Shown: one piece after another, positions 13,861 to 57,741 of the stretch | How the letters are laid out: each line of letters starts with the position of its first letter | Numbering within the stretch: the first letter of the stretch is position 1 | NCBI GenBank assembly: GCA_964234715.1 | Contig: OZ174276.1 | Direction: 5' to 3' (one strand) | From: Podarcis melisellensis | Taxonomy: Eukaryota | DNA: 64,000 bases | Program-made: the position numbers and the translations under genes | The notes under the pieces: model-generated | What the model was told of the DNA's origin: nothing | Databases searched by the model: none | What the model saw: only the letters and a program-made list of their open reading frames with translations

Positions 13861-14291
13861 CAGATTGGAGAATTAGGTCCAAAACTAACAAAATGAATTT
13901 CAGTAGGGTCAAATGTAAAGTTGCACATTTAGGCAAGAAGAACCAGCTGCACAAATATTAGATGGAGGACACCTGGCATGGCAGTAGTACATGGGAAAAC
14001 GATCTAGAGGTCTTAGTAGACCACAAGCTTAACATGAATCAACAGTGTGATGCAGAAGCAAAAAAAGTTAATGCTTGCATCAGCAGAAGCATAGTGTCCA
14101 GATCAAGAGAAGTAACAGTACTACTCTACTCAGCTTTAATCAGACCATTTTATGGAGTACCTATGTCCAGTTCTGGGCACCACAATTGAAGAAGGATATT
14201 GACAAGCTGGAACATGTGCAGAGGAGGGCAACAAAGATGATCAAAGGTCTGGAAACCAAGCCTTATGATGAACAGTTGAGGGAACTGGGTA
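13861..14291 (+). mobile_element. CR1 LINE, 5' part of a 5'-truncated copy interrupted by Bov-B
   Basis: Decayed ORF2 motifs [55 protein letters not shown]. Confidence 0.93.
14198..14291 (+). repeat. 94-bp target-site duplication, left copy (right copy at 17518-17611)
   Basis: ATTGACAAGCTGG...GGAACTGGGTA is identical on both sides of the Bov-B. Confidence 0.95.
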
Positions 14292-14418
14292 CCCCTTCAT
14301 GGATCACTGCCTTGTTGTGGCGAAGGGGCTTGAAGAACTCAGAGAAGCTATGAACTATGCCGAGCAGGGCACCCAAGATGAACAGGTCATAGTGGAGAGT
14401 TTGACCAAACGTGATCCA
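14292..14418 (+). ncRNA. Candidate HDV-like self-cleaving ribozyme / structured 5' leader of Bov-B
   Basis: Helices in HDV order: P1 14292-98/14322-28, P2 14300-07/14411-18, P3 14309-11/14319-21, P4 14335-40/14397-402 plus 14348-53/14387-92. Confidence 0.5.
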
Positions 14419-17400
14419 CCTGGAGGAGGAACCGGCAAGCCACTCCAGTATCCCTGCCAAGAAAACTCCATGGACAAAGACAACAGGCATATAAAAGATA
14501 TGACGCTGGAAGATGAGCCCCTCAGGTCAGAAGGCGTCCAACATGCTACTGGGGAAGAGCGGAGGGCAAGTACAAGTAGATCCAGAGCTGATGAAGCGGC
14601 TAGGCCAAAGCCGAAAGGACGCTCAGTTGCGGATATGCCTGGAAGCGAAAGGAAAGTCCAATGCTGTAAAGAAAAATATTGCATAGGAACCTGGAATGTA
14701 AGAACCATGAACCTGGGTAAGTTGGAGGTGGTCAAAAATGAGATGGCAAGAATAAATATTGACATCCTGGGCATCAGTGAACTAAAATGGACGGGAATGG
14801 GTGAATTCAGTTCGGATGACCATCATATCTACTACTGTGGGCAAGAAACCCGTAAAAGAAATGGAGTGGCCCTCATAGTCAACAAAAGAGTGGCGAAAGC
14901 TGTACTGGGATGCAATCTCAAAAATGATAGAATGATCTCGATACGAATCCAAGGCAGACCTTTTAACATCACAGTAATCCAAGTTTATGCACCAACTACT
15001 TGTGCTGAAGAAACTGAAATTGACCAATTCTATGAAGACTTACAAGACCTTATAGAAGTGACACCAAAGAAGGATGTTCTTCTCATTATAGGGGATTGGA
15101 ATGCTAAAGTAGGGAGTCAAGAGATAAAAGGAACAACTGGCAAGTTTGGCCTTGGAGATCAAAATGAAGCAGGGCAAAGGCTAATAGAGTTCTGTCAAGA
15201 GAACAAGCTGGTCATCACAAACACGCTTTTCCAACAACACAAGAGATGACTCTACACATGGACATCATCAGATGGGCAGCATCGAAATCAGATTGATTAT
15301 ATACTCTGCAGCCAAAGATGGAGAAGCTCTATACAGTCAGCAAAAACAAGACCTGGAGCTGACTGTGGCTCAGATCATCAACTTCTTATAGCAAAATTCA
15401 AGCTTAAACTGAAGAAAGTAGGAAAACCACTGGGCCGGTAAGATACAATCTAAGTCAAATCCCTTATGAATACACAGTGGAAGTGAGGAACAGGTTTAAG
15501 GATTTAGATTTGGTGGACAGAATGCCTGAAGAACTATGGATGGAGGCTCGTAACATTATACAGGAGGCAGCAACGAAAACCATCCCAATGAAAAGGAAAT
15601 GCAAGAAAGCAAAGTGGCTGTCCAATGAGGCCTTACAAATAGCGGGGGAGAGAAGGCAAGCAAAATGCGAGGGAGATGGTGAAAGATACAGGAAATTGAA
15701 TGCAGATTTCCAAAGAATAGCAAGGAGAGACAAGAAGACCTTCTTAAACGAGCAATGCAAAGAAATAGAGGAAAGCAATAGAATGGGAAGAACCAGAGAT
15801 CTGTTCAAGAAAATTGGAGATATGAAAGGAACATTTCGTACAAAGATTTCCATAATAAAGGACAAAAGTGGAAAGGACCTAACAGAAGCAGAAGACATCA
15901 AGAAGAGGTGGCAAGAATACACAGAGGAATTATACCAGGAAGAAATGGATGTCTCATATACCCCAGGTAGTGTGGTTGCTGACCTCGAGCCAGACATCCT
16001 GGAAAGTGAAGTCAAATGGGCCTTAGAAAGCACTGCAAATAACAAGGCCAGTGGAAGTGATGGTATTCCAGCTGAACTATTTAAAATTTTAAAAGATGAT
16101 GCTGTTAAGGTGCTACACTCAATATGCCAGCAAGTTTGGAAAACTCAGCAGTGGCCAGAAGATTGGAGAAGATCAGTCTACATCCCAATCCCAAAGAAGG
16201 GCAGTGCCAAAGAATGCTCCAACTACCGCACAATTGCACTCATTTCACACGCTAGCAAGGTTATGCTTAAAATTCTACAAGGAAGGCTCAAGCAGTATGT
16301 GGACCGAGAACTCCCAGAAGTGCAAGCTGGATTTAGAAGAGGCAGAGGAACCAGAGACCAAATTGCAAACATGCGCTGGATTATGGAGAAAGCTAGAGAG
16401 TTCCAGAAAGACATCTACTTCTGCTTCATTGACTATGCAAAAGCCTTTGACTGTGTCGACCACGGCAAACTATGGCAAGTTCTTAAAGAAATGGGAGTGC
16501 CAGATCACCTCATCTGTCTCCTGAGAAATCTCTATGTGGGACAAGAAGCTACAGTTAGAACTGGATATGGAACAACTGATTGGTTCAAAATTGGGAAAGG
16601 AGTACGACAAGGCTGTATTTTGTCTCCCTGCTTATTTAACTTATATGCAGAATTCATCATGCGAAAGGCTGGGCTGGATGAATCCCTAGCTGGAATTAAG
16701 ATTGCCGGAAGAAATATCAACAACCTCAGATATGCAGATGACACAACCTTGATGGCAGAAAGTGAGGAGGAATTAAAGAACCTTTTAATGAGGGTGAAAG
16801 AGGAGAGCGCAAAATATGGTCTGAAGCTCAACATCAAAAAAACGAAGATCATGGCCACTGGTCCCATCACCACCTGGCAAATAGAAGGGGAAGAAATGGA
16901 GATAGTGAGAGATTTTACTTTCTTGGGCTCAATGATCACTGCAGATGGTGACAGCAGCCACGAAATTAAAAGACGCCTGCTTCTTGGGAGAAGGGCAATG
17001 ACAGGCCAAGACAGCATCTTGAGAAGTAGAGACATCACCTTACCAACAAAGGTTCGTATAGTTAAAGCTATGGTTTTCCCAGTAGTGATGTATGGAAGTG
17101 AGAGCTGGACCATAAAGAAGGCTGATCGCCGAAGAATTGATGCTTTTGAATTATGGTGCTGGAGGAGACTCTTGAGAGTCCCATGGACTGCAAGAAGATC
17201 AAACCTCTCCATACTGAAGGAAATCAACCCTGAGTGCTCACTGGAAGGACAGATTGTGAAGCTGAGGCTCCAGTACTTTGGCCACCTCATGAGAAGAGAA
17301 GACTCCCTGGAGAAGACCCTGATGTTGGGAAAGATGGAGGGCACAAGGAGAAGGGGACGGCATAGGACGAGATGGTTGGATAGTGTTTTCGAGGTTACCA

Positions 17401-17501
17401 GCATGAGTTTGACCAAACTGCGGGAGGCAGTGTAGGACAGAGGTGCCTGGCGTTCTCTGGTCCATGGGGTCACGAAGAGTCGGACACGACTAAACGACTA
17501 A
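14299..17501 (+). pseudogene. Bov-B EN-RT ORF with three lesions
   Basis: TGA at 15247-15249 (probable CGA>TGA). A 1-bp deletion in the A-run at about 15423-15426 shifts frame 1 to frame 3. TAG at 17433-17435, where the other two copies read GAA. The natural stop is TAA at 17499-17501. Confidence 0.9.
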
Positions 17502-17517
17502 ACAACAACAACAACAA

Positions 17518-17962
17518 ATTGACAAGCTGGAACATGTGCAGAGGAGGGCAACAAAGATGATCAAAGGTCTGGAAACCAAGCCTTATGATGAACAGTTGAG
17601 GGAACTGGGTATGTTTAGCCTGGATAAGAAAAGACTGAGAAGATATAAGATAGTCATCTTTAAATATCTGAAGAGCTGTCATCTGGAAAATGGAGCAAAC
17701 TTGTTTTCTCCTACTGCAGAGGAGAGGACCCAAACCAGTGGTCTTAAGTTACATGAAAGGAAATTCTGACTAAACATCAGGAATAACCTTTCATCAGTGG
17801 AACAGAGTCCCTCAGAAGGTGGTGGACTTACCTTCATTGGAGGTTTTTAAGCGAGGTTGGATGGCCATCTGTCACAGATGCTTTAGTTGAGATTCCTGCA
17901 TTGCAGGGGTTTGGTCTAGAGGACCCTCAGTGTCCCTTCCAACTCTAAAATTCTATGATTCT
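17518..17962 (+). mobile_element. CR1 LINE 3' part (continuation of 13861-14291)
   Basis: LRELGMFSLDKKRLRR...LKLHERKF, followed by the CR1 3' UTR and an ATTCTATGATTCT terminus. Confidence 0.95.
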
Positions 17963-56340: not shown

Positions 56341-57741
56341 ATGCCTGTTGCCTTTGTCCATGGAGTTTTCTTGGCAGGGATACTGGAGTGGCTTGCTGGT
56401 TCCTGCTCCAGGTGGATCACGTTTGGTCAAAACTCTCCACTATGACCTGTCCATCTTGGGTGGCTCTGCACAGCATAGCTCATAGCTTCTTTGAGTTATT
56501 CAAGCCCCTTCGCCACATCAAGGCAATGATCCATGAAGGATCCATGAAGTGATCCATGTGGACTGAGAACTCCCAGAAGTGCAAGCTGGATTTTAAAGGG
56601 GCAGAGGAACCAGAGACCAAATTGCAAACATGCACAGGATTATGGAGAAAGCTAGAGAGTTCCAGAAAAACATCTACTTCTGCTTCATTGATGCAAAAAC
56701 CTTTGACTATGTCGAACACAGCAAGCTATGGCATGTTCTTAAAGAAATGGGAGTGCCTGATCACCTCATCTGTCTCCTGAGAAATGTGTATGTGGGACAA
56801 GAAGATACAGTTAGAACTGGATATGGAATAACTGATTGGTTCAAAATTGGGAAAGGAGTATGACAAGGCTGTATATTGTCACCCTGCTTATTTAACTTAT
56901 AAGCGAAAGGCTGGACTGGATGAATCCCAAGCTGGAATTAAGATCACCGGAAGAAATATCAACAACCTCAGATATGCAGATTACACAACCTTGATGGCAG
57001 AAAGTGAGGAGGAATTAAAGAACCTTTTAATGAGGGTGAAAGAGGAGAGCGCAAAATATGGTCTGAAGTTCAACATCAAAAAAACGAAGATCATGGCCAC
57101 TGGTCCCATCAGCTCCTGGCAAATCTAAGGGGAAGAAATGGAGGTGGTGAAAGATTTTACTTTCTTGGGCTCCATGATCACTGCAGGTGGTTACAGTAGT
57201 CACAAAATTAAAAGACGCCTGCTTCTTGGGAGAAAAGTGACAACAAACCTAGAAAGCATCTTAAAAAGCAGAGACATCACCTTGCCAACAAAGGTCCGTA
57301 TAGTTAAAGCCATGGTTTTCCCAGTAGTGATGTATGGAAGTGAGAGCTGGACCATAAAGAAGGCTCGTCGCCAAAGAATTAATGCTTTTGAATTATGGTG
57401 CTGGAGGAAACTCTTGAGAGTCCCATTGACTGCAAGAAGATCAAACCTATCCATTCTGAAGGAAATCAGCCCTGAGTGCTCACTGGAAGGACAGATCCTG
57501 AAGCTAAGTCTCCAATACTTTGGCGACCTCATGAGAAGAGAAGACTCCCTGGAAAAGACCCTGATGTTGGGAAAGATTGAGGGCACAAAGAGAAGGGGAT
57601 GACAGAGGACAAGATGGTTGGACAGTGTTCTTGAAGCTACCAACATGAGTTTGACCAAACTGCAGGAGGCAGTGGAAGACGGGAGTGTCTGGCGTGCTCT
57701 GGTCCATGGGGTCACGTAGAGTCGGACACGACTAAACAAAA
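56341..57741 (+). mobile_element. Bov-B insertion with an inverted 5' segment (56341-56539, minus strand) joined to the 3' 1.2 kb (56556-57741, plus strand)
   Basis: The segments match 14294-14490 (reverse) and 16297-17495 (forward). 13-bp TSD ATAGTCTGGCATG at 56331-56343 and 57742-57754. Confidence 0.95.

What the first reader, a model, noticed from the sequence alone, without database searches (positions are those of the whole stretch)
14292..14418. The 5' end of Bov-B can fold into an HDV-ribozyme-like nested pseudoknot
Seen: from the first base of the element, the helices appear in the HDV order. P1 CCCCTTC (14292-98), P2 TGGATCAC (14300-07), P3 GCC, a 7-nt loop, GGC, then P1' GAAGGGG (14322-28). 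A long P4 follows (GAACTC/GAGTTT enclosing CTATGA/TCATAG), then the linker GACCAAAC and P2' GTGATCCA (14411-18). The second copy (56341-56539, inverted) keeps the helices, with a C-G pair changed to a U.G wobble in P2, and it ends within 2 nt of the same 5' boundary. Known: HDV-like ribozymes process the 5' ends of R2, L1Tc and some invertebrate RTE elements. Inference: Bov-B may cut itself out of host read-through transcripts. That would remove the need for a host-specific promoter and could help explain its wide horizontal transfer. Caveats: L3 (UUGUUGU) and P1.1 are non-canonical and no G1 is visible. I am not aware that this has been shown for Bov-B, but I could not search the literature.
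Basis: partly seen in the sequence, partly recalled or inferred. Interest (0 to 1): 0.82.

Follow-up and report, generated by a model that had tools for sequence, protein, structure and literature searches.

The report
HDV-like ribozyme fold in Bov-B
The first 127 bases of this lizard Bov-B jumping gene fold like the self-cutting HDV-type ribozymes already known in related RTE elements, and the fold is kept in Bov-B copies from frog, rotifers and orthopteran insects but lost in ruminants; actual cutting is still untested.

Summary

Comparison with Bov-B 5' ends from Varanus, a frog, three rotifer copies, three orthopteran copies and metagenome contigs shows a conserved non-coding RNA domain:
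- P2, P3 and P4 carry compensatory changes.
- The P1.1 pair is G-C in the short type and C-G in orthopterans.
- The unpaired invariant bases sit in L3, after P1' and in J4/2, where an HDV-like active site would be.
- The family majority L3 is UUGCCGU. It keeps the conserved U...CG that this copy lost.
- Lizard, frog and rotifer copies start at P1 base 1.

Against:
- The cleavage-site pair is C-G, not G.U.
- No Rfam family reaches threshold; there is only a weak drz-agam-2-2 match in Anabrus.
- RNA-seq shows no pile of 5' ends.
- Orthopteran copies keep a 59-nt leader.
- Ruminant Bov-B has lost P3', P1' and P1.1.

Verdict: probably a new member of the known RTE HDV-like ribozymes. Self-cleavage is untested. 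Two first-stage notes flag similar folds elsewhere in this genome.

The parts
14292..17517 (+). Full-length Bov-B/RTE LINE (3226 bp). The 3' end is a (CAA)n repeat. The ORF encodes APE and RT domains. It is broken by an in-frame stop at 15247-49 and a frameshift near 15440.
14198..14291 (.). 5' copy of the 94-bp target-site duplication, inside a CR1-like LINE
   Evidence: 100% identical to 17518-17611
17518..17611 (.). 3' copy of the target-site duplication
14292..14298 (+). P1 5' strand (CCCCUUC). The predicted cleavage site is 5' of C14292.
   Evidence: 7/7 complementary to 14322-28. 91% of cells are paired in 10 sequences. Rotifer (3 copies), frog and lizard copies start here.
14300..14307 (+). 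P2 5' strand (UGGAUCAC)
   Evidence: Pairs with 14411-18. Four of the 8 pairs carry compensatory changes.
14309..14311 (+). P3 5' strand (GCC)
   Evidence: GCC/GGC in lizards, ACC/GGU in frog, rotifer and orthopterans
14312..14318 (+). L3 loop. It reads UUGUUGU in this copy. The family majority is UUGCCGU (14315 and 14316 T>C).
   Evidence: 82-100% C at 14315, 87-90% C at 14316; frog and rotifers read UUGCCGU or UUGUCGU
14319..14321 (+). P3 3' strand (GGC)
14322..14328 (+). P1 3' strand (GAAGGGG), directly after P3'
   Evidence: unpaired in the nested consensus fold
14329..14330 (+). P1.1 3' side (CU). C14329 pairs with G14314. U14330 faces U14313.
   Evidence: G-C in 9 of 10 short-type sequences. 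It is C-G plus A-U in orthopterans.
14336..14400 (+). P4 domain (several stacked helices)
   Evidence: RNAalifold consensus with compensatory pairs
14401..14410 (+). J4/2 (UUGACCAAAC). C14405 is the nearly invariant candidate catalytic C. It is followed by N-A-A-A.
   Evidence: G112 A113 C114 A116 A117 of the element are invariant or nearly invariant although unpaired
14411..14418 (+). P2 3' strand (GUGAUCCA)
14420..14448 (+). Conserved hairpin downstream of the domain (CUGGAG, 17-nt loop, CUCCAG)
   Evidence: Orthopterans read CAGUGG/CCACUG, which is compensatory
14470..14472 (+). Conserved ATG in CCATGG, the likely true ORF start
   Evidence: All other lineages have stops in every frame upstream of it
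56341..56541 (-). Second copy of the Bov-B 5' end (first ~200 nt, inverted). It is joined to the 3' part at 56556-57737 (+) through 16 nt of partial 5'-end repeats.

Best explanation
The first ~127 nt of Bov-B (14292-14418) are a non-coding 5' UTR domain. It folds into the nested double pseudoknot of the HDV-like self-cleaving ribozymes, of the type already described at the 5' ends of other RTE-clade LINEs. When a Bov-B copy is transcribed as part of a longer host transcript, P1 (element nt 1-7) pairs with the 7 nt directly after P3/L3. The conserved C in J4/2 (C14405) and the L3 U...CG core then form the active site. The RNA cuts itself just 5' of nt 1, so the retrotransposition template starts exactly at the first base of the element. 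Shown here: the fold, its conservation and covariation, and the coincidence of copy 5' ends with P1 nt 1 in lizard, frog and rotifer. Inferred: catalysis and its role in 5' processing. This particular copy is probably impaired, because the conserved L3 C is a U at CpG site 14316 and the ORF is broken.
For: (1) The 5' end is exact because of the 94-bp TSD.
(2) RNAalifold on 10 sequences independently returns P2, P3 and P4, and 10 pairs carry compensatory changes.
(3) With P1 and P1.1 added, 88% of cells pair, against 38-49% when the partners are slid. 14 pairs have double changes, against 1-7 when slid. 0 of 500 shuffles reach the observed values.
(4) P2 is UGGAUCAC/GUGAUCCA in lizard, UGGAUUGC/GCAGUCCA in frog and CGGAUCGU/ACGAUCCG in rotifer. 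P3 is GCC/GGC or ACC/GGU.
(5) Orthopteran Bov-B has the same order of elements with entirely different P1 (GGGGGU/GCCCCU, with a G.U at the site), P2 and P4 sequences. Its P1.1 is C-G plus A-U where the short type has G-C.
(6) The unpaired yet invariant bases are L3 (U..YCGU), CUUG after P1', and GAC.AAA in J4/2. These match the fixed positions of the published HDV descriptor, U19 C23 G24 and CRRA (PMC6326823).
(7) A P1.1 made of one G-C and one U-U is also the state in the active CPEB3 ribozyme (PMC4836649).
(8) Three rotifer copies with unrelated flanks, the frog copy and this lizard copy all begin at P1 nt 1.
(9) The domain is not coding: every lineage except this copy has stops in all frames, and the 45-aa 'N-terminus' has no protein relatives.
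(10) The only ribozyme family that Rfam returns is drz-agam-2-2, the Anopheles RTE ribozyme. It matches the Anabrus 5' domain, and its alignment assigns L3, P3', P1' and P1.1 as I had done by hand.
(11) HDV-like ribozymes at RTE 5' ends are established (PMC3774820, PMC5786205, PMC6765202).
Against: - The cleavage-site pair in the short type is C1-G, not the G1-Y that the descriptor fixes.
- P1.1 has only one pair, and its orientation is flipped.
- There are 10 nt between P4 and P2', against 4 in CPEB3.
- No Rfam model reaches its gathering score. The lizard, Varanus, rotifer, frog and Schistocerca sequences give no ribozyme hit at E<=10. The Anabrus hits score 18 and 15 bits against a threshold of 38.
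- P1 shows only one-sided C/U variation within the short type, so within that type it rests on conservation rather than covariation.
- The orthopteran P1 6-mer has a chance of about 0.12 and overlaps the base of a J1/2 hairpin.
- All 3 orthopteran copies, one of them TSD-defined, keep a 59-nt leader upstream of the predicted site. Their template RNA was therefore not cut there.
- In two lizard RNA-seq runs, coverage of the Bov-B part lies on both strands. No pile of read starts appears at 14292, and 36 and 51 reads cross into unrelated upstream sequence.
- Ruminant-type Bov-B lacks P3', P1' and P1.1.
Confidence: 0.6

Rival explanations
1. A conserved structured 5' UTR domain that has the HDV-like architecture but does not cleave, or no longer cleaves. 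It would serve cap-independent translation, 5' end protection or binding of the element's own protein. The uniform 5' end would come from an internal promoter that starts transcription at nt 1.
For: The cleavage-site pair is C-G and the J4/2 is long. RNA-seq shows no sign of cutting. Orthopteran copies keep a 59-nt leader, so the fold is maintained there without defining the 5' end. A further conserved hairpin and a Kozak ATG follow directly. HDV-like ribozymes of retrotransposons are reported to have translation-initiation roles as well (PMC6765202).
Against: The invariant unpaired bases are the ones that form the HDV active site. A 3-bp P3 with a 7-nt U...CGU loop, followed at once by a strand complementary to nt 1-7, is hard to explain without the ribozyme fold. 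Precedent in the RTE clade favours cleavage.
Confidence: 0.27
2. The conservation reflects a protein-coding N-terminal extension of the Bov-B ORF (ATG at 14299), and the helices are incidental.
For: In this copy an ORF runs from 14299 through the whole domain.
Against: Frog and rotifer have no ATG there. Every other lineage has stops in all three frames across the domain. Lizard and ruminant read part of it in different frames. A search with residues 1-45 found only one protein, a Podarcis gene model. Substitutions are compensatory in helices.
Confidence: 0.02
3. A chance arrangement of complementary segments in one element, with no function.
For: A relaxed descriptor hits shuffled 128-kb sequence 0.5 times on average. 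The MFE z-score of this copy is only -1.5.
Against: The hit lies at the one base fixed by the TSD, which is about 4e-6 by chance. The fold is kept with covariation across lizards, frog, rotifers and orthopterans.
Confidence: 0.03

Closest known systems
[quoted passage not shown]
   Same: Both belong to the RTE LINE clade and sit at the 5' end of the element. Both have the double-pseudoknot order and a 3-bp P3 with a 7-nt L3 ending CGU. P1' lies directly after P3'. The J4/2 of the model (C-u-A-A-A-U) is identical to the rotifer, Candoia and Anolis Bov-B J4/2 (CUAAAU). The orthopteran Bov-B also has a long J1/2 hairpin like the model.
   Different: Sequence similarity is too low for the Rfam model: 15-18 bits in Anabrus only, against a gathering score of 38, and nothing for the other lineages. 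The short type has C1-G instead of G1.U, and G-C plus U.U instead of two C-G pairs in P1.1. Activity is untested.
CPEB3 ribozyme (mammalian HDV-like ribozyme)
   Same: P1 has 7 bp and P3 has 3 bp. P1.1 is made of one G-C pair plus a U-U (PMC4836649). L3 has 7 nt; it is UUCACGU in CPEB3 from my memory, against UUGCCGU or UACACGU here. The U20.G25-type positions are kept.
   Different: CPEB3 has a G1.U36 pair and a 4-nt J4/2. It is a single-copy intronic element, not a retrotransposon part. The P1.1 G-C is in the opposite orientation in short-type Bov-B.
R2 retrotransposon HDV-like ribozymes
   Same: The proposed role is the same: release of the element RNA from a co-transcript. P1 has 6-7 bp directly after L3/P3. 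J1/2 varies from 23 to more than 700 nt. 5' junctions are variable when the cut is at the element end (PMC3774820).
   Different: R2 is site-specific in rDNA and often cuts inside 28S sequence upstream of the element. Bov-B inserts genome-wide and, in the short type, would cut at its own first base.
L1Tc Pr77/L1TcRz of Trypanosoma cruzi
   Same: It is an HDV-like ribozyme in the first 77 nt of a dispersed APE-type LINE and cleaves at +1 (PMC3185411, PMC3383444).
   Different: There the same 77 nt are also an internal promoter. No promoter activity is known or tested for the Bov-B domain.

Membership tests
HDV-like self-cleaving ribozymes | Nested double pseudoknot in the order P1, J1/2, P2, P3, L3, P3', P1', P1.1, P4, J4/2, P2' | tested here: met
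   Coordinates verified. The nested part is predicted independently by RNAalifold. The whole structure is 88% paired against 38-49% when slid. The same order is found in orthopteran Bov-B.
HDV-like self-cleaving ribozymes | P1 of about 6-7 bp whose 3' strand lies immediately downstream of P3/L3 (PMC3774820) | tested here: met
   CCCCUUC/GAAGGGG, with no spacer after GGC. 91% of cells are paired in 10 sequences. The fixed-position chance is 8e-4. Variation is one-sided only.
HDV-like self-cleaving ribozymes | G1-Y pair (usually a G.U wobble) at the cleavage site (PMC6326823) | tested here: not met
   The short type (lizard, frog, rotifer) has C1-G. Orthopteran Bov-B does have G1.U.
HDV-like self-cleaving ribozymes | P1.1: two pairs between L3 positions 2-3 and the two bases after P1' (C-G pairs in the descriptor) | tested here: inconclusive
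   The short type has G14314-C14329 (9 of 10 sequences) plus U.U (10 of 10). Orthopterans have C-G plus A-U. One G-C plus one U-U also occurs in the active CPEB3 ribozyme (PMC4836649).
HDV-like self-cleaving ribozymes | Conserved U19, C23, G24 in L3 (U.G reverse wobble) | tested here: met
   The family majority is UUGCCGU. Frog and rotifers read UUGCCGU or UUGUCGU, and orthopterans read UACACGU or UACGCGU. This window's copy has the conserved C mutated to U at a CpG (UUGUUGU), so this copy itself fails the feature.
HDV-like self-cleaving ribozymes | Catalytic C in J4/2 within a C-R-R-A motif | tested here: inconclusive
   C14405 is conserved in 9 of 10 short-type sequences and in 2 of 3 orthopteran copies. 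It is followed by N-A-A-A. However, 10 nt lie between P4 and P2', and two bases lie between the motif and P2'. The Rfam drz-agam-2-2 consensus has the same C-u-A-A-A-U.
HDV-like self-cleaving ribozymes | Mg2+-dependent self-cleavage that gives a 5'-OH product | not testable with these tools
   The only indirect test was RNA-seq. There was no pile of read starts at 14292, and reads cross the boundary. This is a weak test because most genomic copies are decayed and intronic.
Rfam HDV-like families (RF00094, RF00622, RF01787, RF01788 and others) | Covariance-model score at or above the gathering threshold | tested here: not met
   No hit at E<=10 for the lizard, Varanus, L029, L023, Candoia, rotifers, frog or Schistocerca. 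drz-agam-2-2 scores 18 and 15 bits on two Anabrus copies against a gathering score of 38.
Bov-B / RTE clade LINE | An element of about 3.2 kb with APE and RT domains in an ORF, a short simple-repeat 3' end and a TSD | tested here: met
   3226 bp, (CAA)n tail and a 94-bp TSD. The ORF pieces match proteins up to 98% identical in Podarcis and about 65-80% in Varanus and ruminants, carrying Exo_endo_phos and RVT_1 Pfam domains.

The most novel reading that the evidence does not exclude
Bov-B, the best-known horizontally transferred LINE of animals, carries at its very 5' end an active HDV-like ribozyme with an unusual core (a C-G cleavage-site pair and a flipped single-pair P1.1). The ribozyme would make the short-type element independent of host promoters on arrival in a new genome. 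Lineages that later settled (ruminants, orthopterans) then added 5' leaders or promoters and in ruminants deleted the ribozyme core.
Probability: 0.35. Interest if true: 0.75.

Novelty: new member of a known kind. Interest (0 to 1): 0.62.

Why it matters
HDV-like ribozymes are known at the 5' ends of R2, R4, L1Tc, Baggins and some invertebrate RTE elements. I found no paper that links Bov-B to one: searches for 'Bov-B' or 'BovB' with 'ribozyme' gave nothing on topic. The key 2011 paper could not be read, so prior mention cannot be excluded.

Bov-B is the textbook case of LINE transfer between distant animals. A self-processing 5' end would explain how a 3.2-kb element with almost no 5' UTR can be expressed from any read-through transcript in a new host.

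The comparative series found here makes this testable. It runs from intact core at nt 1 (rotifer, frog, squamates), to core behind a 59-nt leader (orthopterans), to core deleted with a long new 5' UTR (ruminants). It also offers natural variants of the HDV active site (C-G at the cleavage site, inverted P1.1 pair) for ribozyme enzymology.

Tried and rejected
- Rfam scans at E<=10 gave no ribozyme hit on the window region, on Varanus, L029, L023, L021 and Candoia, on Schistocerca or on a rotifer. The only hit was the weak drz-agam-2-2 match in Anabrus.
- A protein search with ORF residues 1-45 found one Podarcis gene model, so this is not a conserved peptide.
- The search for related loci in viral contigs gave one unrelated 28% APE match.
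- In bacterial genome contigs it gave five Bov-B contaminant contigs, either 5'-truncated or ruminant-type.
- The Anolis loci L047 and L054 were 5'-truncated.
- The Schistocerca serialis gene model was too long to fetch.
- The Candoia copy is old and its P1' has decayed.
- RNA-seq gave no 5'-end pile at 14292. This does not support cleavage, but it is a weak test.
- I looked for a P1 at the true 5' end of the orthopteran element (GGGCCCA...) and found no suitable partner directly after P3'.
- Ruminski 2011 (PMC3308841) and Webb 2009 (PMC3159031) are not held.
- The coding explanation and the chance explanation were both rejected.

Full report
**What is in the window**

The window comes from a lacertid lizard; the best protein matches are 98% identical to Podarcis muralis.

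- A self-BLAST shows that 14198-14291 and 17518-17611 are 100% identical over 94 bp.
- Between them lies a 3226-bp Bov-B/RTE element (14292-17517). It ends in (CAA)n and is inserted into a CR1-like LINE.
- The 5' junction is unambiguous: ...gggta|CCCCTTCATGG, against the empty-site reading ...gggta|tgttt.
- The ORF has an in-frame stop at 15247-49 and a frameshift near 15440, so this copy is not autonomous.
- A second partial copy (56341-56541, minus strand, 93% identical) holds the first ~200 nt inverted against a 3' fragment (56556-57737).
- Sixteen nt of partial repeats of the 5' end lie between the two pieces.

**The observation**

- A relaxed HDV-order descriptor asks for a 7-bp P1, an 8-bp P2, a 3-bp P3, a 6-8-nt L3, and P1' directly after P3'. 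It finds only this site on both strands of the window.
- Twenty dinucleotide shuffles give 0.5 hits per 128 kb. A hit at the one base fixed by the TSD is therefore of the order of 4e-6.
- Rfam gives no hit here even at E<=10, and the MFE z-score is only -1.5. This copy alone would not be convincing.

**Comparative data**

I collected Bov-B 5' ends through protein matches and fetched their DNA:

| Source | Locus |
|---|---|
| Varanus | L039 |
| Candoia | L040 |
| Frog, Pelobates | L050 |
| Rotaria socialis | L048, L052 |
| Rotaria magnacalcarata | L055 |
| Schistocerca | L049 |
| Anabrus | L051, L053 |
| Metagenome contigs, mammalian-type Bov-B | L001-L038 |

Reads and contigs of public lizard runs were laid on 14142-14591.

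**The short type (squamates, frog, rotifers, metagenome copies L029 and L023)**

RNAalifold on the 10-sequence alignment A1 independently returns P2, P3 (with its 7-nt loop) and a multi-helix P4. Ten pairs carry compensatory changes. When P1 and P1.1 are added as pseudoknots:

- 88.4% of cells pair, against 38-49% when the partners are slid.
- 14 pairs have double changes, against 1-7 when slid.
- 0 of 500 shuffles reach the observed values.

Examples:

| Helix | Lizard | Frog | Rotifer |
|---|---|---|---|
| P2 | UGGAUCAC/GUGAUCCA | UGGAUUGC/GCAGUCCA | CGGAUCGU/ACGAUCCG |
| P3 | GCC/GGC | ACC/GGU | ACC/GGU |

- P1 (C[C/U]CCUUC with GAAGGGG) is 91% paired but varies on one side only. The two 'double changes' listed for it are mis-registered rows (frog, Candoia).
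- The unpaired bases that never vary are L3 U..YCGU, CUUG after P1', and GAC.AAA in J4/2.
- Those positions correspond to the fixed positions of a published HDV descriptor: U19, C23, G24 and C-R-R-A (PMC6326823).
At 14315 and 14316 most genomic copies and nearly all RNA reads have C, which gives UUGCCGU. Frog and two rotifer copies read the same.
- 14316 is a CpG site, so its C-to-U change may have followed insertion.
- P1.1 is G14314-C14329 plus a U.U. One G-C plus one U-U is also the P1.1 of the active CPEB3 ribozyme (PMC4836649).

**Where copies start**

Three rotifer copies with unrelated flanks all start at |CUCCUUC. The frog copy starts at |CCCCUUC, and this lizard copy starts at |CCCCUUC as fixed by its TSD. 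Varanus reads (gg)CUCCUUC.

Copy 2, L029 and L023 read AUCC... at the boundary. That fits the variable junctions reported for ribozyme-processed R2 elements that cut at their own end (PMC3774820).

**The domain is not coding**

Every lineage except this copy has stop codons in all three frames across the domain. Frog and rotifer lack the ATG at the position of 14299. Residues 1-45 of the ORF found only one protein, a Podarcis gene model.

A conserved ATG in CCATGG (14470) is the likely ORF start. Between it and P2' lies another conserved hairpin (14420-14448) with compensatory changes in orthopterans.

**Orthopteran type**

Schistocerca and two Anabrus copies share the same order of elements with different helix sequences.

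- P1 is GGGGGU with GCCCCU, a G.U at the predicted site.
- A J1/2 of about 58 nt holds a hairpin.
- P2 is CUCCAACU/AGUUGGAG, and P3 is ACC/GGU.
- L3 is UACACGU or UACGCGU.
- P1.1 is C-G plus A-U, the inverse of the short type's G-C.
- P4 has two compensatory pairs between the two genera.
- The J4/2 contains a C.

Rfam's drz-agam-2-2, the Anopheles RTE ribozyme, matches the Anabrus domain weakly. It scores 18 and 15 bits against a gathering score of 38. The best hit has E = 1.3 in 37.5 kb and 0.011 in 301 nt. Its alignment assigns L3, P3', P1' and P1.1 as I had done by hand. Schistocerca gives no hit.

Two points count against the proposed function here:

- All three copies, one with a 10-bp TSD, begin 59 nt upstream of the predicted cleavage site. 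Their template RNA was not cut there.
- The P1 6-mer has a chance of about 0.12 and overlaps the base of the J1/2 hairpin.

**Ruminant type**

The mammalian contigs read ...GGACCAC A GCC UUGUC|UAACUC.... They keep P2, which covaries (U-A to C-G), and P4. They lack about 20 nt that hold the end of L3, P3', P1' and P1.1. They also extend 340-700 nt further upstream, and two subfamilies share only about 62 nt of that extension. The most successful Bov-B expansion therefore has no HDV core.

**RNA evidence**

In two RNA-seq runs of the lizard, the Bov-B part is covered on both strands at similar depth. No position shows a pile of read starts. Thirty-six and 51 reads run across 14292 into unrelated sequence. 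This does not support cleavage. It is a weak test, because most copies are decayed and intronic.

**Comparison with what is known**

[quoted passage not shown] Full-text searches for Bov-B or BovB with 'ribozyme' returned nothing on this topic. Ruminski 2011 and Webb 2009 could not be read. Two first-stage notes of this scan flag similar folds elsewhere in this genome; they are not independent evidence.

**Verdict**

The fold is real, conserved and of the HDV-like kind, and I file it as a probable new member of the RTE ribozyme group. Membership is not complete for the short type:

- The G1-Y pair is not met.
- P1.1 and J4/2 are atypical.
- No covariance model reaches threshold.
- Catalysis is untested.

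My odds:

| Reading | Probability |
|---|---|
| Self-cleaving in at least the short-type lineages | about 0.6 |
| HDV-like fold kept for another 5' UTR role | about 0.27 |
| Coding constraint or chance | about 0.05 |

The remainder, about 0.08, is left unassigned to readings I have not named.

Noticed in passing
14198-14291 and 17518-17611; 15247-15249; near 15440: The target-site duplication is unusually long (94 bp) and perfectly identical, which implies a very recent insertion. Yet the ORF already has an in-frame stop and a frameshift. The copy was probably mobilised in trans from a defective source.
   Followed up: partly
56341-57737: Copy 2 is a rearranged insertion. The first ~200 nt of Bov-B are inverted and abut a 3' fragment (equivalent to 16297-17495 of copy 1). 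Sixteen nt of partial repeats of the element's 5' end (GGATCACTTCATGGAT) lie at the joint. This looks like template switching at the RNA 5' end or twin priming.
   Followed up: partly
14420-14448 and 14470-14472: A second conserved 5' UTR hairpin (CUGGAG, 17-nt loop, CUCCAG; CAGUGG/CCACUG in orthopterans) is followed by a conserved ATG in a CCATGG context. The loop sequence AAGG.AA.GGCAA.CCA is conserved from rotifers to ruminants.
   Followed up: partly
L001-L038 (for example L004:1454, L020:770): Ruminant-type Bov-B has a clean deletion of about 20 nt that removes the end of L3, P3', P1' and P1.1. It has acquired 340-700 nt of extra 5' UTR. Two subfamilies share only about 62 nt of that UTR.
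   Followed up: partly
L049:1717-1775, L051:1622-1680, L053:2122-2180: Orthopteran Bov-B carries a 59-nt 5' leader made of two hairpins (CCCAGG/CCUGGG and GAGUCUC/GAGACUC) upstream of the HDV-like domain. Its role is unknown; it could be a promoter or a decoy for P1.
   Followed up: no
L042-L046: Short Bov-B contigs sit in assemblies labelled Adlercreutzia, Sinisalibacter, Paraclostridium, Phaeospirillum and Novosphingobium. This is almost certainly animal DNA contamination. L042 and L043 are about 82% identical to the lizard element.
   Followed up: no
14217-14291: RNA-seq depth on the CR1-like flank is 10-20 times higher than on Bov-B and strongly one-stranded. Fixed differences (for example A>C at 14233) and common loose ends at 14223 and 14291 show that the reads come from a related, highly expressed CR1 fragment elsewhere in the genome.
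   Followed up: no
L029, L023 (metagenome contigs): Lizard-like short-type Bov-B 5' ends with the P3'/P1' core occur in the same metagenome samples as ruminant-type copies. L029 is inserted in L1-like sequence. They may be an older Bov-B subfamily in a mammalian host.
   Followed up: no
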